A stretch of 64,000 nt of DNA from Podarcis muralis. Lineage: Eukaryota. The notes below the pieces were generated by a model. That model was not told where the DNA came from. It made no database searches and was given only the letters and a program-made list of their open reading frames with translations. Position 1 is the stretch's first letter; each line of letters starts with the position of its first letter. The stretch is taken from assembly GCF_964188315.1 (NCBI RefSeq), contig NC_135655.1, positions 82,274,001-82,338,000 of the forward strand, read 5' to 3'. The translations under genes and the position numbers were made by a program. Below are positions 1,450 to 55,807 of the stretch, in pieces.

Positions 1450-1515
1450 TATTATTTGTACCCCGCCCATCTGGCTGGGTTTCCCCAGCCACTCTGGGCG
1501 GCTTCCAACAAAGAT
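1402..1515 (-). mobile_element. L2-type LINE 3' end with (AAT)n tail
   Basis: ccccgcccatctggctgggtttccccagccactctgggcggc matches the tails at 59064-59130 and 700-780. Confidence 0.8.
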
Positions 1516-1541
1516 GAAAGATACACTATATGTGATATGCA

Positions 1542-1892
1542 GGGACACGGGTGGCGCTGTGGGTAAAACCTCAGTGCCTAGGACTTGCCGATTGTATGGT
1601 CGGCGGTTCGAATCCCCGTGGCGGGGTGCGCTCCCGTTGCTCGGTCCCAGCACCTGCCAACCTAGCAGTTCGAAAGCACCCCCGGGTGCAAGTAGATAAA
1701 TAGGGACCACTTACCAGCGGGAAGGTAAACAGCGTTCCGTGTGCTGCACTGGCTTGCCAGATGCAGCTTGTCACACTGGCCTTGTGACCCGGAAGTGTCC
1801 TCAGACAGCGCTGGCTCCCGGCCTCTTAAGTGAGATGAGCGCACAACCCTAGAGTCGTACACGACTGGCCCATACGGGCAGGGGTACCTTTT
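1542..1892 (+). mobile_element. Sauria SINE (Squam1), full length
   Basis: tRNA-like A/B boxes and ggggtaccttt tail; TSD tatatgtgatat at 1527-1538 and 1893-1904. Confidence 0.92.
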
Positions 1893-2799
1893 TATATGTG
1901 ATATAGCACTGTGACTCCCAATGGCGCTGTGGAGTCCCGTCTTTCCCTACCAGATTTCCCTGTATGAGTTTACAACGTGTTTAACTGAATTGCTTCTTCG
2001 ATGTGTCTAGATCCAGCCATGCAATCACCATGTACATACAGACACACATGCCTATGCATACCTCCTTCCCTCTCTCAGTTGGCCCAATGGTATTTCTCTG
2101 TCTCTCATAGAACTGAACACACCTCTCTCCCCCTTACAAAAGCCTTCCCAGGGTAGCAGACAGGCAGAGAAGCAATCAGGGAAACCATCACAATTGCTTC
2201 TCTTAAACTAGAAGAAGAAACTCTTTAGGGCATTGCAAGCCCACCACCGTCTTCAACAGTACACAGCAGGGCAGCAAAGTGATCCTTGTTTCTCCACTGG
2301 AAATTAGACTTCTCCTTGTTTCCTTTTAATTTTTAGTCCCAACCACCTAAAACTGAAAGATTAAGAAGGATCATATCAGAAGAGAATCACTGCAGGATCT
2401 GTGGCAGTTTTTTACATCATGGACATACTGTACCTAAAAAAGCCAGAAGCCTTTTGGGCTGCTTTGCATGATTAATCCCTTGGTTTGGCAAGTAACAAAA
2501 GGTAAGGTGCTGATCATAGACCTTTGTTGAGCTCTGTTGGTTTTCAGATAGTTTTTCAAGAGCAGCAGGCACTGTTTACATTGGTAGAAACCTATTGGGA
2601 AGTAGCCAGAGAGTCCCAAGAACACTAGAGGATCACGTGTTCCTCAGGCCTGTTCTATAGACTTGATATCATGACTGGAAAGGAAAGAAAGGGAGGAATT
2701 GAACAACTGTTTGGTATTCACTTTTATAAACAAGTTCAGGTCCACATTTCCCCCCAATATTCTAGGATGAGAAAAATTACACATGGGGAGGAAATGGTC

Positions 2800-5860: not shown

Positions 5861-6607
5861 GAGAATGTGGGGACAAGAGGGGAAAATGTAATTCATTTGC
5901 ATAAAATACCAGGTTTATTCAATAAAATACCTTACACTGAATGTATGACAAATATACATACTGCACAGAAAAAAGTATCATTTTGTACAATGCTACACCA
6001 TTTTATCATTCTGCTGGTAGGCCTGGAATACATAATGTATTATGAAAACACACAGGGGATCCTTCCCATTTAGGTTGCTGTTGCAGACATCAGACGGAAG
6101 ATGGAGCTCTGAGAAAAGGAAGGAAAAGAAGATGTTGTTTTCCATTGTGAATGTAAGCCTGTTCAGGGTGATTCAGAGCTCCTTCTGAGCAATAAATGTC
6201 CTTTAAGAAAACCATGATGCTCAACAGTTGAATACTTGGCAACTCAAATCCAATTCAGAAATATCACTCATGTGAGGAGTGGGGCCATGCTGACTAGCCC
6301 ACCTGGAGATTGCATGAACCAACTACCTCCTCCCCAACTGAGCATTTGCAGGAGAAAGCAGTCACACATACCACTGTATGGAATCATACATATATAAAGG
6401 TTCTCCCCTTGCAGACGTTTGCACTGCACAGGCCAATGTTAGAGTGTAGGCACATGGCAGGTGCAAGGCCTGTCAAAGCAGGCCCACTCTCTTCTTATGC
6501 ACTGGCCCAATGTGTGAGGGATACTTTTGAACAGAACTTCAGTATGGAGAAAACTGAGCTAACAGGATCTTCTTCCCCTCTTTAAGATATAGACTTACAA
6601 AGCCACT

Positions 6608-6950
6608 GGGGCGTGGGTGATGCTGTGGTCTAAACCACCAAGCCTCTTGGACTTGCCGATCGGAAGGTCGGTGGTTCGAATCCCCGCGACAGGGTGAGCT
6701 CCCATTGTTCAGTCCCAGCTCCTGCCAACCTAGTAGTTTGAAAGCTCGCCAATGCAAGTAGATAAATAGGTACCACTGCAGTGGAAAGGTAAACGGCTTC
6801 CTAGCAGTGGTTTAATCATGCTGGCCACATGACCCGGAAAGCTGTCTGTGGACAAACACCAGCTCCCTCGGTCTGAAAGCAAGATGAGCACCGCAACCCC
6901 ATAGTCACCTTTGACTGGACTTAACCGTCCAGGGGTCCTTTACCTTTACT
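6608..6950 (+). mobile_element. Sauria SINE, full length
   Basis: Same family as 1542; TSD ttacaaagccact on both sides. Confidence 0.92.
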
Positions 6951-7075
6951 TTACAAAGCCACTCTAACATATGTAATAAAAGGTGAACAAACGGTGAATC
7001 ACTGTAGGATTAAAAACTTTACTGGACAGTATCAATGTCATTCTTGGGTATTGGCTCAGTTCTATTTCTACTGTA

Positions 7076-7335
7076 CAGTGGTACCTTGGGATGCAAACAG
7101 GATCTGTTCTGGAGCCCCGTTCGCATCCTGAACAGAATGTAAGATGCAACGGCACGTCTGTGCATGCGTGGGTCATGTTTTGCCACTTCTGCGCATGCGT
7201 GTGACGTCATTTTGAGCGTCTGCACATGTGTGAGCGGCAAAACCCAGAAGTAACACACTCCGTTACTTCTGGGTTGCCACGGAGCGCAACCTGAAAACGC
7301 TCAACCTGAAGCACATTCAACCTGAGGTATGACTG
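7076..7335. mobile_element. Tigger/pogo-like Tc1-mariner MITE
   Basis: TA|cagtggtacc...ggtatgactg|TA. Confidence 0.8.
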
Positions 7336-7429
7336 TAATCACTTTTAGTTTAACAACCAATCAATTGCTATTGTGAAACTCCTGCACATATTCTAGTAAA
7401 TTAAGACAGATATTGGGGTCTTAGGGGGG

Positions 7430-18194: not shown

Positions 18195-18990
18195 CTGCAA
18201 GAGAGGGGAGTGGTTGTGGCCGGGAGCCGGACTCCGCCTCAAGCAGGGGGCGTTTGCCCCCTGCCTCCCACTCACCTGGCTGGCGCCCACGCCCTCGGTC
18301 AGGCACCCAACCAGGTGCCTTCAAGGGGGCGTGTTCAGCAGCCTGAATTGCTGCGACGCCAGCCTCCAGCCCTCACTTTTGTCGGCCCGTCGCGAGTCAC
18401 CCACCCTCTACTCCCTTAGAGCAGGGTTTCCAGTTTTCTTTTGGCCTTGCTATGGACCTTAGGTTGGTCGCCCTGGTTGTCCGGGGAGCCTGGTAGGAAT
18501 TTTTCCATTTGGCATTAGGCTTTTTGGTTTTTTCGCCTACCTCGTAGCAATCATCACAACTTTCGTGGTATTGGTGGATAGGTTAGGCATTGGAATAATG
18601 TGTTGTGGTGTCAAAGGGCTAGGTGTGGCCATCACCTGCGCCTTCAATTTTTGGGTATTCCGTTAAAGGAATCCGGCGGTCGTGTATTCTGTCCGATGCC
18701 TGCTTGGCGGGAGGCCATGGCACGACCCTCGGTGACATCAGGGGAGAGCCTATAGTTGAATTAGCATCAACAGGCTCCACCTACTGGTGAATAAACCCCC
18801 TTTGTTTGTTTGTTTGTTTTTTAGACTCACCCCTCTTCGAGTGGGTGGAGTCAGCTGCCATTATCCAATGCCTAAGCCAATACCTTTTCACTTGCTGTAA
18901 TCAATAAAGTTGTGGCCTTTTCTTGCCCATTAACCTTATATCACGTGTCCTTGTGTTTCATTCCACTGCACGGGGTTCGGGTCCTCGAAC
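18195..18990 (+). mobile_element. DIRS/tyrosine-recombinase retroelement-like non-coding remnant
   Basis: CpG-rich block with internal complementary segments, ending in aataaagttgtggcc; no ORF. Confidence 0.45.
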
Positions 18991-26746: not shown

Positions 26747-27691
26747 TCAGCGGACGACAACAATTCTTTCTGTTGTTCTCTTCAGAGCATCTTTCACCTC
26801 CTTGTTTCTCAGGCTATAGATCAGAGGATTGAGCATAGGAATCACCAGTGTGTAGAAAACGGAAGCTATTTTATCCGTTGCTAGAGAGTGGTTTGTACTA
26901 GGTTGCAAATACATAAAGATCAGAGTTCCATAGAAGATGGTGACAGCAGTCAAGTGAGAAGCACACGTGGAGAAGGCTTTGAGTCGTCCCTGAGCAGAGC
27001 TGATTCTCAGAATGGCTGAGAGGATAAACGTATAAGAGATGAGAACAATGAGAAGGGAGCATAGCATATCAAAACCAGCAAAAGCGTAAATCAGTATCTG
27101 CTTGGTGCTGGTGTCAGAGCAAGAAAGGGCTAACAACGGGAGGTCATCGCAGTAGAAATGGTTGATCACATTAGCAGAGCAGAAGGACAAACGAAATGTA
27201 ACTATGGTGTGGAACAAGGCAACACAGAAGCTGTATGCATAAGGGCCAGCTGCCAGCTGGATGCAGACTCTCTGGGACATGATGATCCGATAAAGCAGTG
27301 GATTGCAGATGGCCACGTAACGGTCATATGCCATCACCGCCAGGAGAAAGCACTCTGTGATCATGAAAGTAAGGAAGCAGCCCAGCTGTGCTGCGCACGC
27401 GTAGTACGAGATGGTTTTCTTAGCTGCTAAGAAGTTTGCCAGCATCTTAGGGGCAATGACAGAGGAATAGCAGAGGTCAACAAAAGCCAAGTGGCTGAGG
27501 AAGAAGTACATGGGGTTATGGAGGTGGCTATCAGTCCGGATTAGAAGGATGATCCCAAGATTCCCCATCACAGTGATAACGTAGATCAGGAGGAAGATGA
27601 CAAAGAGGGGGACTTGTAGGTCCGAGCGGTCGGTGAGTCCAAACAGAATGAACTCCTTCACTGTGGTCACGGTGTGATTGGCATCTGCCAT
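26747..27691 (-). CDS. OR8U-like: Olfactory receptor, OR8U-like (314 aa)
   Basis: Intact ORF. TM3 [22 protein letters not shown] and HFYCDD.PLL match recalled mammalian OR8U1. Confidence 0.95.
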
Positions 27692-31191: not shown

Positions 31192-31327
31192 CAGTGTTTC
31201 CCAAACTTGGGTCTCCAGCTGTTGTTGGGCTACATCTCCCATCATCCCTAGCTAGCAGGACCAGTGGTCAGGGATGATGGGAATTGTAATCGAAAAACAG
31301 CTGGAGACCCAAGTTTGGGAAACACTG
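31192..31327. mobile_element. hAT MITE (hairpin)
   Basis: TIR cagtgtttcccaaacttgggtctccagctg; TSD ctatagag/ctgtagag. Confidence 0.88.
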
Positions 31328-32542: not shown

Positions 32543-32858
32543 AAAAGGTAAAGGGACCCCTGACCATTAGGTCCAGTCATGACCGACTCTGGGGTTGTGG
32601 CGCTCATCTCGCTTTATTGGCCGAGGGAGCCGGCGTACAGTCATGTGGCCAGCATGACTAAGCTGCTTCTGGCGAACCAGAGCAGCCCACAGAAACACCA
32701 TTTACCTTCCCGCCGGAGTGGTACCTATTTATCTACTTGCACTTTGACGTGCTTTCAAACTGCTAGGTGGGCAGGAGCAGGGACCAAGCAACGGGAGCTC
32801 ACCCCTTCATGGGGATTCAAACCGCCGACCTTCTGATTGGCAAGTCCTAGGCTCTGTG
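32543..32858 (-). mobile_element. Sauria SINE, slightly 5'-truncated
   Basis: TSD tagtagcacttta at 32530-32542 and 32860-32872. Confidence 0.9.
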
Positions 32859-48972: not shown

Positions 48973-49932
48973 ATGAAAGAGAAAAACTTCAGCGTAATAA
49001 TCAATGAGTTTGTATTTGTAGGGTTAACAAACAATCTCATACTACAGATTGTCCTCTTTCTAGTCTTCCTTGCTATTTATATTGCTACTTTGGTGGGAAA
49101 TCTAGGACTGTTTGTGTTAATAAGAGCCTGTCCCAAGCTCCACACTCCAATGTACTTCTTTCTCAGCAACCTCTCTCTCCTCGATGCATGCTTCTCCTCT
49201 GTGGTTGCCCCTAAGACTTTTGTGAATCTCTTAGCAGATAAAAAGACCATTTCCCTCACTGGATGTGCATTGCAAATGTACTTTGTGATAGGTCTGGGGA
49301 GCACAGAGTGCTTTCTCCTGGCTGCAATGGCATATGATCGCTATGTGGCTATCTGTAAACCACTGCTGTATCCAGTCCTCATGTCTCCTAAAATCTGTAC
49401 ACTTCTGGTGGTGGGGTCCTATGCTCTTGGGCTTCTGCACTCTCTTCTCCATACAGTCTTCACCTTCCGGCTGTCATTCTGTCAATCTAACGAAATCAAT
49501 CATGTATATTGTGACATCACTGCACTTTTATCACTTTCTTGTTCGGATACTTACATCAATGAACGTCTGATTTTTTTTGAGGCTGGGCTTGTAGAAGGAA
49601 CCACCATCCTGAGTGTTGTCGTCTCTTATATATACATTCTCATCAACATTGTGAGGATCAGCTCAAGGGCAGGTAGACTCAAGGCATTCTCCACTTGCAC
49701 CTCACACCTCACTGCAGTTACCATCTTCCATGGGGCAATTCTTATCTTGCATTTCCGACCAAACTCTGGCAGTGGATCGTTTCTTCAAGATGTCACGGAC
49801 AAAACCCTTGCTGTGTTCTACACAATTGTCATCCCCTTACTGAATCCCTTGATATACAGCCTGAGAAACAAGGAGGTTAAGGATGCCTTAGGAGGCATTC
49901 AGAGAAAAGTATGTAACAAAATGAGTAGCTAG
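48973..49932 (+). CDS. Olfactory receptor, paralog of the 43832 gene (319 aa)
   Basis: Intact ORF with OR motifs; shares [12 protein letters not shown] with the 43832 gene; acceptor at 48944-48946. Confidence 0.94.
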
Positions 49933-50438
49933 CAACAATTTCTAAACATTTCCACAAGAGTTATATATTGCTAGTCCATTATCAGCATCTATGTATGGTG
50001 TTGCATGTCCAATATTAAAATTACAAAAATGTAGCCTCTCTTGTCATTTACCTATATGATGATCTTAAGGATCAATATAAGTTCAGCAAATAATATAAGC
50101 TAGAAGTGCTCATTGTAGCTTAGGGTTGCCATATTTCAAAAAGCAAAAACCAGGACATCCCAAAAGTTGTTGAGATTTTTTTAAGGAAACCCCCAAAATT
50201 GTTGAGTTGTTTTTTAAATAAAAGAGAGTAAGTCAATTCTAGGAAAGTAATGCCCTATTCTTAAATTGCTTATCTATGATTACCTCTTACAATAAATATG
50301 TAGAAGATACCACATATCATGTGTGGTTGCAATGAGAGAGGGCTGTGGAGATGAACATGAGATCTTAAGATTGTGAGGAAACACAAAAGCCAGAGTGGTC
50401 TCATGGGGAGATCTTGGGCCGATCACTACTACTTAGTA

Positions 50439-52458
50439 CAGTGTTTCCCAACCTTTTTTGGGCAAAGGCACACTTGTTTCATGAAAAAAATCTTGAGGCA
50501 CACCACCATGCCAGATGGGGAAAGGTCACTTTCTACTTATGTAAAAAAAAAATAGTAACAGCATAGAAGGTAATGGTTAGGCTAGCATCCCTCTTCCAAA
50601 TATGCTAGGTTTTTATTTGCAGGGACTGTTCTACATGGGAAAGCATTCAGCACTGTCATTCTCCCATCTGCCACCTGAATTGGTACTATTCTGGGTCAAC
50701 TTACTCTGCTGCATGTGTAGATGAAAATGGCACCAAGTGTGGGGGAGGGGGCAGAACAGGTTTCAGATACAGGATATTAAGCATACACGTACTTCAGATT
50801 GAACTGGTTGCTTGCTTTGCAAGTTTTCATTTCCCAAATGACTGCCTTGGCAAGCGCAATACCTACCAGGCTCAACGCCGGTCTCGCGCTGCCGCTTCCC
50901 ACGCTCTCAAGGACCCGGGAGGAGGAAGGCGTGAAGGGAATCCCGAAGGCGCGAAAACCTCGCGCATGCGCAGGCCTTCCGCCTGCGACAGCCCAGTAGG
51001 CCAGCCGAAGCGAGCGGCGATGGGATGTGGGAGGGAGCTCGCTCGCCGCCCCGTGTGTGCCTATGTGGGGCACGTTACAGCCCCGTGACGTCAGCGCCAC
51101 GCAGGCAGCCAGGCAGGCAGACGGCGAGAGCCCCGCGCTAGTGTGCCGCGGAACACCGGTTGGGAAACACTGGTCTAATGATGACAATTTGGCCCTCTCT
51201 GAAGTGCTTCTCTGCAAGATATGGTAGGGTGTGTTACACAAGTAAACACTTGGAGGGTATGATAAAGAGAGCATTCCAAGAGTGACTTGGGATGCTATGA
51301 AGATGCTGCAAAAGTGGGCATGTGATTATTGCACGCCTTAAGCTAATGCTGAATACCCAAGAGTGTACAACTGGACTGCTGAATCCTAACTCGGTGTACT
51401 GAAAAGATGCTGGATGAGGCCCAGGCCAATAGTACCTGCAAAAGCAGCGTTATTAAAAGCAGCTTTCCCTTTGAACATCTCTTTGTTCAAAGTGCATCTG
51501 AAAGCCTAATGACCCACTGGTTCCTTATGAGTGAGCTTTAATGCAAGGATTTTGATGTTAATCCATGGATCAGATGCGTGTGTGTGGATAATCGCATTGT
51601 TGGACAGTCCTTTCTGCCTGTTGGCCGTTAGCCAACGACCCCCTCCTCCGCCTGAATGAAATGTGCCCCGTGGGAGCGTTGGGACATCAGAACCACGAGT
51701 TATAGTTATAGGCACGTCCCAGGGCGAAGCAGGTTTGGAGGGAGGGGGGTGCCTAAGAAACTATCGACGGGGTTGGCGAGGCGGCGTTCAGACTGGGCTG
51801 CAAACAGCAGCTGTGTAGCCTGGCCATAGGAAAGGCGAGCAGCTCCTTTTATTTCCTCCCTCGCAGCTGATTCCCCTCTCTCCCGCCACCAGATTGTGAA
51901 AAGGCTCGGAATTCAGCCTGAGGAAAACCCCAAGTCCCCACATTTCTAGTTTCCCGCGCCCTTTAAAGGGTGATACGAGCCCCACGGCAGGCAGGCAGGC
52001 AGGCAGAGCTGGGACAGAGGTTTCCAGGGGACACGGCAGCTCCTCGAAAGGCTTCTCTCGGCTGCGCTCAATCCTCCTCGGAGAGGATTTCCCCTCCGGT
52101 CCCATGCGTTCGTTTGGGGGAGCCCTCCGGCTGCTCCCTCTCCCGCCGCGCAGGAGCGATGCCTCTCTCTGGCTCTCCCTCCGCGCAGGCTGAGGGAGGG
52201 AGGGAGGGGCGCGTGTGACCCGTCTCTGCTGGGAGACCAAACCCAGCGAGGCAGAGTCGCGCGGAGGCGCCCAGGCAGCGCTGCCGGCTGCGAGGAGGAG
52301 CGCCAGGCAGCAGCAGGAGGCGCGGCCTCTCCTCACCGCCGCCGCCCCGCCTCTCGCCGCCCGACTCGCCCGCCTCCCTCCAGGCAACATCTTGCGGCAC
52401 ACCAGGCAGCGTCTCGCGGCACACTGGTGTGCCGCGGAACACCGGTTGGGAAACACTG
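50439..52458. mobile_element. Non-autonomous hAT element with CpG-rich cargo and an internal duplicate right end
   Basis: Perfect TIR cagtgtttcccaacc/ggttgggaaacactg; perfect TSD acttagta at 50431-50438 and 52459-52466; subterminal ggcacac motifs. Confidence 0.88.
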
Positions 52459-52965
52459 ACTTAGTATATAGAATATTCTACTACTTAGAATATAGAATAT
52501 ATACTACTATATACCTCATAGAATCGCTGTGAGGATAAAAAGGTAATAAGGAGACCATGTTTACTCTACACACCCAGAGAACCTTAATTATTGGGCAGAA
52601 CATAAACACTGCAAATAAATTAATAAGCTACCTTCTGCTTGGAGAAAGGGTCAGGTGTTTTTTTAAAGCAACAACAGCTAAACATATAATAAAGCAGTGT
52701 GCAAAAGTTCCATGATAGATGTTCAGAGATTCCTCATAATAAGCGCAAGGTGTGAAAAATAGGAAATATACTTTATTTCCTTGACATCTAATGGGAGGGC
52801 ATTCCACAGGGTGGACGTGACTACTAAGAAGGCCCTATGAGCTCTCCACAGCCGCCAACAGCGCACCCACACGAAGGGAAGAATCTACTTGGACTTCTGG
52901 TCCAGTATTCACTCTGCTCTCTCAGCTTCTTCATTTCTCTTCACCTGCCTTATTTCCCTCTAGAG

Positions 52966-53103
52966 CATCCTTTCTCAACCTGTGGGTCCCCAGATGTTTT
53001 TGAACTACAACTCCCATCACCCCTAGCTAGCAAGGCCAGAGCTCAGGGATGATGGGAGTTGTAATCCAACAACATCTGGGGACCCACAGGTTGAGAACCG
53101 CTG
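52966..53103. mobile_element. hAT MITE
   Basis: Hairpin interior; perfect TSD ctctagag at 52958-52965 and 53104-53111. Confidence 0.85.
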
Positions 53104-53327: not shown

Positions 53328-53460
53328 TAGAGGTGGAGAACCTGTGTCCCTTCAGATGCTGCTGGGCTCCCAGCTCCCATCAGTTCCAGCCAATATGGCC
53401 AATGATCAGGGGTGATGTTAGTCCAGGAGCATTTGGAGGACTGTAGGTTAGCCATTCCTG
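53328..53460. mobile_element. hAT MITE, degenerate
   Basis: TSD ggttaaac/agttaaac. Confidence 0.65.
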
Positions 53461-55807
53461 AGTTAAACTAATCAGCTTCTGGGTATATGTCAAATACCTA
53501 CCCTGGAAGGTGACTTTGAGCAAGAAGACAGTTTGGTTCATGCAAACGATGCTAGCCTAAAAATCTCAACATACTTTCAATTTACGTTTTGATCCTGAGG
53601 AAGAACTTGAAGAAAAGAGAGTCCTCCTTGGGATGTAGCTGGCAAAATGAGTATTTCGAGACCATGAATACTGTTAGTACTAGAAGTACTGCTTCTTGAT
53701 TTCCTTGTGAGTTTTATTTTCAATACAAATAGGGTAAAATACAATTAAGACACTCTTCAAAATGAATTTTGGCATCATCAATAGACCTCAATGCCAAACT
53801 GTTTAAGTTATGTGAGGTCTCATTGTTGTTATAGGTAAACCTCTCTAAGGTGCAGGTCCAAAATCATTCTCCAAATCATGGGGAAATGGCAGTTGATCTT
53901 ATCATACTGGACAGCTGCCAGGAAGCAAAAGTGGAGAGAGTAAGAACAGGAAGCTGGACTAGAGGGGCCTTTGGTCTGATGCAGTGGGGCTCTTATGTTC
54001 ATTTCTTTTCTCTAGGTTTTTTTTAATATTAAAAAATGCCTTGCCAGTTTTTCAAGCAGCATCTTAGATGCTTTCAGCTGCTGCCAAGCCATAGCCCATG
54101 GGGCAGATTGCTTCCCACCAACTGTAGTCCTTTAGGATCCGATCATATTTTGCATATTTATTTTAATATATTCAAGATAACTTGCACCTGTTTTATTTTT
54201 GGTATTCTTGTAACTCATCCTGGGACAATTGGGTGAAGAAGAGGGTCTATGTAATAAATAAGTAAATATTAGAATTCACAAAAAACTGTTTCCTTTATGG
54301 TTACAGACTGTTTCATTAGCCAGTGCCCCATGGGAGATTGTACTAACAAATCTCTGTATGCTAGAACCGCCACAGGAGTTTTGTTGTTGAAGTACAGTAT
54401 GGAGAAAATTACTTTTTTGTCTTGTAAAATCCTGGCGCTTCACCAACAAAGAAAGGCCAGTATAATAAAGCTACTTTTTGTAACAGTTTGTGGAAGTTTA
54501 TATTTCCTTCCAATGAGGTCTGTCAGTGTGAAGCACCCAAAACCATTTCATCCACAATATCTTTCCACTGTGTATTATTTAGAGATTCCTCCATATCAAA
54601 CCAAAAACATCTTGGCAAAGTCACAAGGTAAACAAAGAAGTATTAACAGAGCAGCTTGACTTATTACTGCAGAGGTCCATCAGGTGGAAGGATCCCAATG
54701 GGTTTACCCAAACCCAGATCTTCAAGATAAAATAAGTACATCTTCATTTGGGAATCTGATGACTAAAAGAAGGCATGCACTTCAGACCTAGAATAATAAC
54801 CTAGAATAATAATTAAGAAACCAACTTCAACTCCTTCCCTTGCTGCTATAATTGTTGCCTGAAACTGTGGTGAGTACAGATCTCTCCTTTTCTCCAATGT
54901 GGTATACAAGCTGATGTTGTCCTCAGATTCTCAGAGAATTCATAATGAATTTAAAGAGTTTATGGCTAAAAATGAGATAACTATTCTACCTAAATTTATC
55001 AGTGAGAGACATCCATGCTGACGTAAAGAAAATGATTTGCTTCTTTCCTATATGATTTGTCACCTTATATTTCTTAACCTGGTGCCCATGTCCATATATA
55101 GAGAACATTCCATCTGTGGAATTTTGCTTCCATATGTGGAACTCCTTTATTGGCTTGGCGTGTAACATCAGTATGTTACATTAACAAAAACATTAGAAGA
55201 GCTCTGACCAAAGACCTGTCTTATTCAGCATCCTGACCTAAGCAACCAGATCCTTATGGGAAGCTCATAAACAGGATATGAACAAAAGAGCGCTACCATC
55301 AATTGTTATTCCCAGCACTTGAGGAAATGATATTGAGTTTAAATGAAGTCAACTGGGTGTAGCTTGTCCAAATAACTCATAATTGCTGGAGTTGTTAAAA
55401 GTGGCCTACAATTTCCTTTCCCCTTTCCCCCATTTTATTCTTCTTCTTGTTTTTATATATTGTTTATAGGAAATTCTATCCTGCTGTTCTAGTGCCTCTG
55501 CAATGCTCAGTATTCTTAATTTTCTCACAATATAAAAATATATTTAGAGGGGGGTCTTTTTTTAAAAAAGGAGAAAGAACAGTAACTGAAACAACACCTG
55601 TGTATTTTCAGTTAAAGGATCAAACTGGAGATTGCTCAGACAAGTTCCTCCTTTCCCCCCCTAAAAAAATGATATTTCCGAAGAGATTTTGAATGTCAAA
55701 TAATCTTGTTTTTTTTTATAGCAGCTTTTCAAAATCTGATTTGCTACCTATAACACTGAAATTTATTATTTTCCTCCTTTCCAATAACAGTATGTTTGCA
55801 AGGGCAC

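What the first reader, a model, noticed from the sequence alone, without database searches (positions are those of the whole stretch)
50439..52458. Candidate Pack-type hAT transposon delivering CpG-island cargo into an OR cluster
Seen: a 2020-bp unit with perfect 15-bp TIRs, a perfect 8-bp TSD (acttagta) and ggcacac subterminal repeats at both ends, but no transposase. The interior is a mosaic of AT-rich pieces and two very CpG-dense blocks, unlike the CpG-poor surroundings. Known: Pack-MULE and Pack-TYPE elements capture gene fragments in plants; well-described vertebrate hAT equivalents are few. Inference: a young hAT family capturing and dispersing host regulatory DNA, able to place an ectopic promoter or CpG island in a normally silenced OR array.
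Basis: partly seen in the sequence, partly recalled or inferred. Interest (0 to 1): 0.8.

Follow-up and report, generated by a model that had tools for sequence, protein, structure and literature searches.

The report
Recently inserted composite lizard hAT transposon
A 2-kb transposase-less hAT transposon, rich in promoter-like CpG DNA, jumped recently into a lizard smell-receptor gene cluster, but its contents are the shared sequence of a very large repeat family, not DNA freshly picked up from a host gene.

Summary
At 50439-52458 there is a perfect 15-bp TIR pair, a perfect 8-bp duplication (ACTTAGTA), GGCACAC repeats near both ends, no transposase, and two blocks that meet CpG-island criteria.

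New evidence: contigs of two other animals (X1, same species label, identical flanks; X6, second label, about 3.6% diverged flanks) join the flanks precisely with one ACTTAGTA. So the whole 2,020 bp moved as one unit, recently.

X1 lacks this insertion, yet every interior segment is present in it. Rough abundances against single-copy depth are:
- ends: about 10,000-20,000x
- 50550-50872: about 470x
- CpG block 1: about 1,700-4,400x
- 52001-52351: about 110x
- 51173-52000: about 7-8x

No single-copy donor, coding exon or protein homologue was found.

The element is a rare composite. A complete 734-bp family member (50439-51172, with its own right end at 51138-51172) is fused to 1,286 bp that ends in a second right end. 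I infer it was mobilised from the outer ends.

All five substitutions in CpG block 1 between two copies are CpG transitions, which suggests methylated, decaying copies.

This scan has already flagged similar gene-start- or CpG-island-carrying hAT elements elsewhere in this genome.

The parts
50431..50438 (.). Left copy of the 8-bp target-site duplication ACTTAGTA
   Evidence: The empty-site contigs hold only one copy (records 3 and 19).
50439..50453 (+). Left terminal inverted repeat CAGTGTTTCCCAACC
   Evidence: (I6).
50439..50549 (+). Left end and subterminal region, with GGCACAC at 50467 and 50497. This is the most abundant part of the family.
   Evidence: One search gives summed depth 80,000-180,000 against about 9 for single-copy flank in X1.
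50550..50872 (.). CpG-poor interior segment, about 470x. On the minus strand it follows a splice-donor-like CTG|GTAGGT at about 50861.
   Evidence: record 4: one 323-bp contig, depth 4123, 1 mismatch..
50873..51139 (.). CpG block 1, promoter-like. It holds an NRF1-type palindrome (50961-50972), a GC box (51046) and a CRE TGACGTCA (51086-51093). It is the common interior of the family, at about 1,700-4,400x.
   Evidence: One search gives the depths, and shows the frequent family form that joins 51139 directly to 52322.
51138..51172 (+). Internal second copy of the family's right end, 34/35 identical to 52424-52458. Together with 50439 it closes a complete 734-bp element.
   Evidence: (D3, I1). 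The same junction is present in an independent copy, L001.
51173..51712 (.). Low-copy segment, about 8x, mostly CpG-poor. In X1 its main form continues 206 bp to the left of 51173 with sequence unlike this element.
   Evidence: record 5. L001 is collinear up to 51712 and then diverges.
51713..52000 (.). Low-copy segment, about 7x, moderately CpG-rich. It holds TTTAAAG at 51961 and a (GGCA)n run at 51987-52007 that repeats 51101-51121.
   Evidence: record 6, which bridges 51712. (D1).
52001..52351 (.). CpG block 2, right part, about 110x in X1. Family-level RNA over it is strand-biased.
   Evidence: record 7 (depth 976, 9 mismatches in 351 bp) and the X23 columns of table 2.
52352..52458 (-). 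Right subterminal region and right TIR (52444-52458). GGCACAC lies at 52396 and 52418 on the plus strand and at 52427 on the minus strand. There is a 12-nt perfect hairpin at 52394-52405 / 52424-52435.
   Evidence: (I6, I15). One search gives depth of about 80,000.
52459..52466 (.). Right copy of the target-site duplication ACTTAGTA

Best explanation
This is a recent insertion, absent from two other animals, of a rare 2-kb composite member of a very abundant, recently active, non-autonomous hAT family in a lacertid (wall-lizard-like) genome.

The left 734 bp (50439-51172) is a complete short family member. It has a left end, a CpG-poor stretch, the promoter-like CpG block that thousands of copies share, and a minimal 33-35-bp right end.

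Directly after that right end come 1,286 bp: a stretch that is low-copy (about 7-8x) up to about 52000, then the family's commoner right-hand sequence and a second right end.

Inferred origin: the short element sat inside or just upstream of a longer element of the same family, or of another sequence that ended in a family right end. A transposase supplied in trans then paired the outer left end with the outer right end, bypassed the internal end, and moved the whole block. This is how Ac/Ds macrotransposons form. The composite has since transposed more than once: there is at least one further copy (L001), and there is a deletion variant.

What is shown:
- the ends and the target-site duplication
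- the precise empty sites
- the multi-copy status of every segment
- the internal end

What is inferred:
- the hybrid-end origin
- that 51173-52458 is the right part of a longer family member
- that the family's CpG block came originally from a host promoter

Nothing indicates that this copy itself captured anything.
For: Precise empty sites:
- X1 record 3 (594 bp) joins 50430 to 52459 with 0 mismatches, at the single-copy depth of 8.65.
- X6 record 19 joins 50438 to 52462. It differs only by an extra unit of the neighbouring 24-bp tandem repeat and about 3.6% flank divergence.

Every segment is multi-copy. X1 lacks the insertion, yet its depth across the element is never below 59, against about 9 in the flanks. 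The abundance gradient rises towards both ends (table 2).

The composite exists elsewhere. Locus L001, from another run, matches 50550-51712 at 98.5% and runs straight across the internal right end.

The break falls at the element's last base. X1 record 5 matches 51709 down to exactly 51173, the base after the internal TIR, then runs on for 206 bp unlike this element. This fits an uninterrupted progenitor sequence into which the short element had inserted.

The family shows typical hAT internal-deletion variants (tables 5, 5c and 7):
- 51139 joined to 52322
- 50508 joined to 51075
- 50745 joined to 51188
- 50460 joined to 52363
- 50461 joined to 52394

The short element's right end differs from the common form by a deletion with CT microhomology.

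Literature:
- Ac macrotransposons bounded by ends of two elements do transpose (PMC9910405, PMC3260210).
- hAT/hobo elements of Anolis carry extraneous filler DNA (PMC3014272).
Against: - The tool warns that summed contig depth is not a copy number, so the multiplicities are rough.
- I could not read the 206 bp left of 51173 in X1. I could not read any other full copy either. So it is unproven that 51173-52000 belongs to a longer hAT element rather than to low-copy host DNA.
- No progenitor locus with GTCTAATG on both sides of the short element was seen.
- No autonomous element with these TIRs was found in the window or in the scan's notes.
- Only two animals were checked for the empty site.
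- The TSD ACTTAGTA does not fit the loose nTnnnnAn hAT target preference (my own knowledge).
Confidence: 0.6

Rival explanations
1. True Pack-type capture at the level of this 2-kb subfamily. The low-copy middle (51173 to about 52000) is host DNA, for example the flank of a donor insertion or a low-copy promoter region. It was picked up next to the short element and is now spread by transposition. One of the roughly 7-8 copies would be the donor.
For: - The segment is far rarer than the rest, at about 7-8x.
- In X1 its main form is not joined to a hAT end on the left (record 5).
- It is held at 0.66-0.82 of its words by several small runs guessed to be RNA.
- In stranded RNA reads it is covered on one strand only, as an expressed host sequence might be.
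- Other scan notes report host gene starts inside hAT elements of this genome (unchecked here).
Against: - No single-copy donor was seen.
- The collapsed contig of the segment is near-identical in all DNA runs of both species labels, each holding 0.81-0.85 of the words. This fits a young repeat family as well as it fits a host locus.
- There is no exon, Pfam domain or protein homologue.
- Abundance rises stepwise towards the right end (about 7x, 110x, 1,000x, 9,000x), as expected for the right arm of a longer element and its deletion derivatives.
Confidence: 0.25
2. The composite arose during double-strand-gap repair after excision (abortive synthesis-dependent repair with template switching, the usual source of hAT filler DNA), not by use of two elements' ends. 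Repair synthesis copied another short element to its end, ran on into that copy's flank, then switched back to the family's right arm.
For: - Many family variants have short filler insertions and microhomology at their joints. Examples are 8, 12 and 40 letters between the joined sides (table 5c).
- A 21-bp (GGCA)n-type direct repeat (51101-51121 and 51987-52007, 95% identical) brackets the extra 886 bp (D1). This is the kind of microhomology used in template switches.
- Tan et al. (PMC8277862) give gap filling and template switching as the main route to Pack-TIRs in animals.
Against: The left junction falls exactly at the last base of an intact TIR (51172|51173). This is expected for an intact inserted element and unlikely for a random switch point. 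However, read-through off a template copy would give the same junction, so the two models are hard to separate with the data in hand.
Confidence: 0.3
3. The interior holds no host DNA at all. The CpG-dense blocks are the promoter and untranslated regions of the still unidentified autonomous hAT element, and this element is only a rearranged deletion derivative of it.
For: - Abundance gradients rise towards both ends.
- There are many deletion variants.
- Family-level RNA is strand-biased over 52134-52424, at 2.8-6.7 to 1, and one-stranded over 51261-51745. This fits transcription from an element's own promoter.
- The low-copy part has about the copy number expected of an autonomous element.
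Against: - No transposase fragment is present anywhere in the 2 kb.
- The sharp alternation of CpG-depleted stretches (o/e 0-0.2) with CpG-saturated ones (o/e about 1) looks like vertebrate promoter DNA plus its surroundings, not like one transposon's sequence.
- No autonomous element is known from the window or from the scan's notes.
Confidence: 0.25
4. Assembly artefact: the 2-kb block was wrongly placed in the reference assembly.
For: None of the public runs listed holds more than 0.70 of the words of 50300-52600 or more than 0.85 of 51190-52000. So no independent run was shown to carry this exact copy.
Against: - A perfect 8-bp duplication of a target that is present once in the empty alleles, together with complete TIRs, is the signature of real transposition.
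- Contigs drop rare variants, so the missing words are not evidence of absence.
Confidence: 0.03

Closest known systems
Non-autonomous hAT elements with filler DNA: maize Ds2 and Ds-like elements (Du et al. 2011, PMC3260210) and Anolis hobo/hAT families (Novick et al. 2010, PMC3014272)
   Same: - Short TIRs starting CAG, an 8-bp TSD and subterminal repeats.
- No transposase.
- An interior unrelated to any transposase gene.
- Many deletion and filler variants.
- In clusters of related elements, the high copy number hides where the filler came from.
   Different: - Here the filler is CpG-island-grade, promoter-like DNA that is shared by thousands of copies.
- The family is still inserting in a lacertid lizard.
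- The autonomous partner is unknown.
Ac/Ds macrotransposons and alternative transposition using ends of two nearby elements (PMC9910405, PMC4270019)
   Same: A left end and a right end that did not originally belong together bound a larger block that moves as one unit and makes a normal 8-bp TSD. An internal, bypassed end is retained.
   Different: - The maize cases are 10-100 kb, were seen happening, and have known progenitors.
- Here the block is 2 kb, the progenitor was not found, and the mechanism is inferred from anatomy alone.
Animal Pack-TIRs (Tan et al. 2021, PMC8277862), for example the multicopy hAT-N8_XT carrying the CAPSL 5' UTR in Xenopus tropicalis
   Same: - A vertebrate hAT element carrying non-transposon, 5'-end-like DNA.
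- It is multicopy, with distinct insertion sites.
- It is absent at the orthologous site of a relative.
   Different: - A Pack-TIR is defined by an identified parental copy of the captured DNA, and none was found here.
- Copy numbers here are orders of magnitude higher than the three-copy frog case.
[quoted passage not shown]

Membership tests
hAT superfamily, non-autonomous element | Short terminal inverted repeats beginning YARNG | tested here: met
   A perfect 15-bp TIR pair starting CAGTG. The YARNG rule is from my own knowledge of the hAT literature.
hAT superfamily, non-autonomous element | 8-bp target-site duplication created on insertion | tested here: met
   ACTTAGTA lies on both sides. 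The empty alleles in X1 and X6 carry it once.
hAT superfamily, non-autonomous element | Mobilised by a hAT transposase (BED finger, DDE and hAT dimerisation domain) encoded by a related autonomous element | not testable with these tools
   There is no transposase in the element or the window. No autonomous element appears in the scan's notes.
hAT superfamily, non-autonomous element | Multi-copy family with shared ends and subterminal repeats | tested here: met
   4,368 contigs of X1 and 4,778 of X6 lie on the stretch, and end depths are about 10,000-20,000 times flank depth. GGCACAC is clustered at both ends.
Pack-TIR / Pack-TYPE (gene- or host-DNA-capturing TIR transposon) | The interior matches an identifiable parental host locus outside any transposon | tested here: inconclusive
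   No segment is single-copy; the minimum is about 7x. There was no protein homologue or exon. Exact-ORF look-ups found nothing. The full genome could not be searched by DNA.
Pack-TIR / Pack-TYPE (gene- or host-DNA-capturing TIR transposon) | Cargo bounded by TIRs and a TSD, and moved by transposition | tested here: met
   (precise empty sites). A second composite copy is L001.
Composite element / macrotransposon | Contains an extra, internal transposon end, and the outer ends delimit the mobile unit | tested here: met
   The internal right end is at 51138-51172. The TSD and the empty site correspond to the outer ends only. GTCTAATG after 51172 does not match ACTTAGTA.
Composite element / macrotransposon | A progenitor arrangement of two separate elements exists or existed | not testable with these tools
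   The only hint is that the X1 contig runs on unlike this element from exactly 51173 (record 5).
CpG island | At least 200 bp with GC of at least 50% and CpG o/e of at least 0.6 | tested here: met
   50751-51250 and 51501-52500 pass. 100-bp bins reach o/e 0.8-1.1.
CpG island | Unmethylated in the germ line, with open chromatin or promoter activity | not testable with these tools
   Indirect evidence against: 5 of 5 differences between two copies in block 1 are CpG transitions, and divergence there is 1.67% against 0.31% in the adjacent CpG-poor segment. Indirect evidence for: family RNA is strand-biased.

The most novel reading that the evidence does not exclude
The family's standard interior (block 1: NRF1 palindrome, CRE, GC box, splice-donor-like site, then CpG-depleted 'intron-like' DNA) is a captured host housekeeping promoter. 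A currently active lizard hAT family has copied this promoter thousands of times, and it still fires, giving strand-biased transcripts that read out of the elements into flanking DNA. The internal-end composite seen here would then show the way the family keeps acquiring further DNA, by bypassing its own right end. That would make it a vertebrate promoter-dispersing transposon on a scale not reported before.
Probability: 0.25. Interest if true: 0.7.

Novelty: new member of a known kind. Interest (0 to 1): 0.42.

Why it matters
Cut-and-paste DNA transposons that are still inserting are rare in amniotes. Multicopy elements carrying non-transposon, promoter-like DNA are rarer still: Tan et al. 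found four multicopy Pack-TIRs in 100 animal genomes.

This copy adds two things:
- a clean filled-versus-empty example in a lizard
- anatomical evidence (an intact internal end) for how such elements can grow

For the OR cluster itself, the insertion places about 1.3 kb of CpG-island-grade sequence 507 bp downstream of one receptor ORF and 3.3 kb upstream of the next. Carriers and non-carriers could be compared directly for receptor expression and chromatin.

The finding is not unique. The same scan has already reported several similar elements in this genome, and the specific claim of fresh host capture is not borne out here.

Tried and rejected
Searches that gave nothing useful:
- Protein search of the 222-aa minus-strand ORF over block 2: nothing found. 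The exhaustive HMMER search gave only two weak, many-stretch, low-complexity hits, which I discarded.
- Search of the 165-aa ORF over block 1: it found only one Logan contig, L001, which is another copy of the same composite.
- Search of the 69-aa ORF across 51509-51715: nothing.
- Exact-product look-ups of five element or L001 ORFs: nothing new.
- Look-up of the neighbouring OR protein: it returned only the window's own assembly record, GCA_964188315.1 OZ076954.1, identical to the window. No second assembly was available for comparison.
- Rfam: only sub-threshold miRNA-like and speF-like noise in the element.
- BLAST of the element against the rest of the window: only the TIR of the MITE at 31192 matched.
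- The scan's notes searched by sequence: blank.

Ideas rejected:
- The zero depth of X6 over 51261-51939 is not absence. The same run holds 0.85 of that segment's words.
- I considered that the L001 divergence at 51712 (into CAGGGGCGCC...) marks the true edge of a captured piece. I rejected this because an X1 contig of about 7x depth bridges 51712 in the window's arrangement (record 6). L001 more likely carries a further insertion there.
- RANBP9 or other coding cargo: no long ORF with a start codon and homologues was found. This could not be tested against a lizard RANBP9 sequence.

Full report
**1. The observation**

The ends are as described. CAGTGTTTCCCAACC lies at 50439-50453 and its exact reverse complement at 52444-52458. 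ACTTAGTA lies immediately outside both ends, at 50431-50438 and 52459-52466.

- With up to two mismatches, the TIR 15-mer occurs five times in the window against 0.25 expected, and no shuffle reached five.
- Three of the five hits belong to this element: the two ends and an internal copy.
- The other two bound a 136-bp MITE at 31192-31327.
- GGCACAC occurs 11 times in 64 kb. Seven of these lie in this 2-kb unit, five within 65 bp of an end and one more in the internal right-end copy.
- No ORF in the unit has a Pfam match.
- CpG o/e is 0.26 for the window. It is about 0.8-1.0 over 50800-51199 and 0.4-1.1 over 51600-52499. Two stretches, 50751-51250 and 51501-52500, pass the usual CpG-island thresholds.
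- The neighbouring ORFs are olfactory receptors. The insertion lies 507 bp after the stop of the ORF at 48973-49932 and 3.3 kb before the next ORF, at 55796.

**2. It really moved, as one piece, and recently**

I laid contigs of public runs on 50000-52900.

- In X1 (same species label), one 594-bp contig at single-copy depth (8.65) matches 50179-50430 and 52459-52800 without a single mismatch. This is the flanks joined, with one ACTTAGTA.
- In X6 (second species label), one 691-bp contig joins 50438 to 52462. It differs by an extra unit of the adjacent 24-bp tandem repeat and by about 24 substitutions in about 660 bp.
- hAT excision normally leaves footprints (my own knowledge). A clean single-copy target in both animals is therefore the pre-insertion state.
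- So the 2,020 bp were inserted as a unit, after or within the history of the species. The insertion is absent from the two animals examined.
- Only one read-laying run was allowed, so I could not measure the allele frequency.

**3. The interior is not private cargo**

X1 lacks this insertion, so everything of X1 that lies on 50439-52458 comes from other loci. The tool warns that summed contig depth is not a copy number. The values below are therefore rough abundances, measured against a flank depth of about 9.

| Segment | Rough abundance | Contig evidence |
|---|---|---|
| Left end | about 9,000-20,000x | |
| 50550-50872 | about 470x | one contig, 1 mismatch |
| CpG block 1 (50873-51163) | about 1,700-4,400x | |
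| 51173-51709 | about 8x | one contig, 6 mismatches |
| 51680-52033 | about 7x | |
| 52001-52351 | about 110x | 9 mismatches |
| Right end | about 9,000x | |

- No segment is single-copy.
- X6 shows zero depth over 51261-51939, but this is a filter hole. X6 holds 0.85 of the words of 51190-52000, and the other DNA-size runs of both labels hold 0.81-0.85.
- The words missing from every run correspond to the private variants of the window's copy.

**4. The family**

Joints and loose ends show the usual swarm of hAT deletion derivatives:

- 51139 joined to 52322 with GG between. This is seen in 14 RNA reads and in X1 and X6 contigs. It gives a form of about 840 bp, which matches the size of several elements noted elsewhere by this scan.
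- 50508 joined to 51075, seen in 67 RNA reads.
- 50745 joined to 51188.
- 51059 joined to 52332.
- Mini-MITEs with 50460 joined to 52363 and 50461 joined to 52394, some with short filler.

Block 1 is therefore the family's ordinary interior.

**5. The internal right end, and what the 2-kb unit is**

- 51138-51172 repeats the right end at 34/35. So 50439-51172 is by itself a complete 734-bp element.
- Its right end relates to the common form by a deletion with CT microhomology.
- The 8 bp that follow it (GTCTAATG) are not the outer TSD.
- A Logan contig from another run (L001, 1,201 bp) matches 50550-51712 with 17 differences (1.5%) and runs straight across this internal end. So the composite exists in at least one more copy.
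- Eight of the 17 differences are private to the window's copy, because the X1 contigs agree with L001 at those sites.
- In X1 the main form of the low-copy segment matches down to exactly 51173 and then continues for 206 bp unlike anything in this element (record 5).

The simplest reading has three steps:
1. The 734-bp element had inserted into, or next to, a sequence that carries a family right end 1.3 kb downstream.
2. That sequence was probably a longer family member, given the stepwise rise in abundance towards that end.
3. Transposase then used the outer pair of ends.

This is the macrotransposon principle known from Ac/Ds (PMC9910405, PMC3260210). Repair synthesis that read through a template copy into its flank, followed by template switching, would give the same product. 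A 21-bp (GGCA)n-type repeat at 51101-51121 and 51987-52007 brackets the extra 886 bp and could have guided such a switch. I cannot separate the two models without the progenitor locus.

**6. Is the interior host-derived at all?**

Arguments for, all by inference:
- Block 1 holds an NRF1-type palindrome (50961-50972), a full CRE (51086-51093) and a GC box.
- On the minus strand it is followed by a splice-donor-like CTG|GTAGGT and then by CpG-depleted DNA. This is the layout of a housekeeping promoter, a non-coding first exon and the start of an intron.
- The sharp alternation of CpG-saturated and CpG-depleted pieces is hard to obtain within one transposon after amplification. It suggests the mosaic predates the family.
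- Other notes of this scan report host gene starts inside hAT elements of this genome (RANBP9, CRPPA, PKD2, ARHGEF33). I did not check them.

Arguments against:
- There is no donor, no exon and no protein homologue.
- The length filter of one search and the 50%-cluster representatives of the other could miss a short first exon.

Pack-TIR membership needs an identified parental copy (PMC8277862). That criterion is not met here.

**7. Activity as a CpG island or promoter**

- All five differences between the window copy and L001 within block 1 are CpG transitions. Divergence there is 1.67% against 0.31% in the adjacent CpG-poor 323 bp. These copies behave as methylated DNA in the germ line.
- In the stranded RNA run X23, the flanks of this locus have zero depth. 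That animal may lack the insertion, and its tissue is unknown.
- Family-level reads are strand-biased over 52134-52424 (first mate on minus 2.8-6.7 times more than on plus) and one-stranded over 51261-51745.
- About 180 reads at each end run out into diverse flanks.
- This suggests that some copies are transcribed from within. It says nothing about this copy.

**8. Comparison and verdict**

The element is a structurally typical non-autonomous hAT. The defining features that could be tested are met, and the transposase partner was not testable.

- In its filler-rich interior it is closest to Ds2 and Ds-like elements and to the Anolis hobo/hAT families (PMC3260210, PMC3014272).
- In its composite build it is closest to Ac macrotransposons.
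- It works like a Pack-TIR, but it cannot be filed as one because no parental copy was found.

It stays open for the 7-8x middle segment.

The scan had already found and followed up similar elements on other DNA of this genome. I rate this a new member of a known kind, of moderate interest.

The assembly record returned (GCA_964188315.1, OZ076954.1:82312973-82333932) is identical to the window. The label 'wall lizard' comes from earlier notes, not from a test of mine.

Noticed in passing
window 31192-31327: A 136-bp palindromic MITE with TIR CAGTGTTTCCCAAAC, 14/15 identical to the TIR of the element studied. Its 8-bp TSD is CTATAGAG / CTGTAGAG. The subterminal sequence is different, so it is a different family that may use a related transposase.
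   Followed up: partly
window 52966-53102 and about 53330-53440: SPIN-like hAT MITE palindromes (ends ...TTCTCAACCTGTGGG). They score below threshold against the Anolis miRNA family mir-5408 (48 bits against a gathering score of 90, on both strands). That miRNA family looks MITE-derived.
   Followed up: no
window 52459-52506: A 24-bp tandem duplication (ACTTAGTATATAGAATAT / ACTTAGAATATAGAATAT) starts at the insertion target. Organism B (X6) carries one more unit of 23 letters, so this is a copy-number variant right next to the insertion site.
   Followed up: partly
window 50121-50214 and 52716-52836: Two very abundant short repeats flank the insertion, at about 2,800x and about 26,000x single-copy depth in X1. 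Contigs break at 52772 and 52811. They are the reason that public short-read contigs of this locus are so short.
   Followed up: no
L001:1-52 (reverse strand; follows the equivalent of window 51712): This other copy of the composite diverges after ...GTTATAGTTAT into CAGGGGCGCCGACTTATAAAAAATATTGGGGGGGCC. This looks like the end of a different transposon inserted into that copy. There is no match in the window.
   Followed up: partly
window 1451-2000, 6601-7350, 18351-18850, 27251-27450, 32551-32800: Further CpG-island-grade patches lie in this otherwise CpG-poor OR cluster. No inverted-repeat pair bounds the three that I checked. Their origin is unknown.
   Followed up: partly
window 51097 / 52139 (variant seen only in RNA reads of X23): Twelve reads join 51097 to 52139 through 40 letters found nowhere in the stretch. 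This is another family variant with a different filler between block 1 and the right arm.
   Followed up: no
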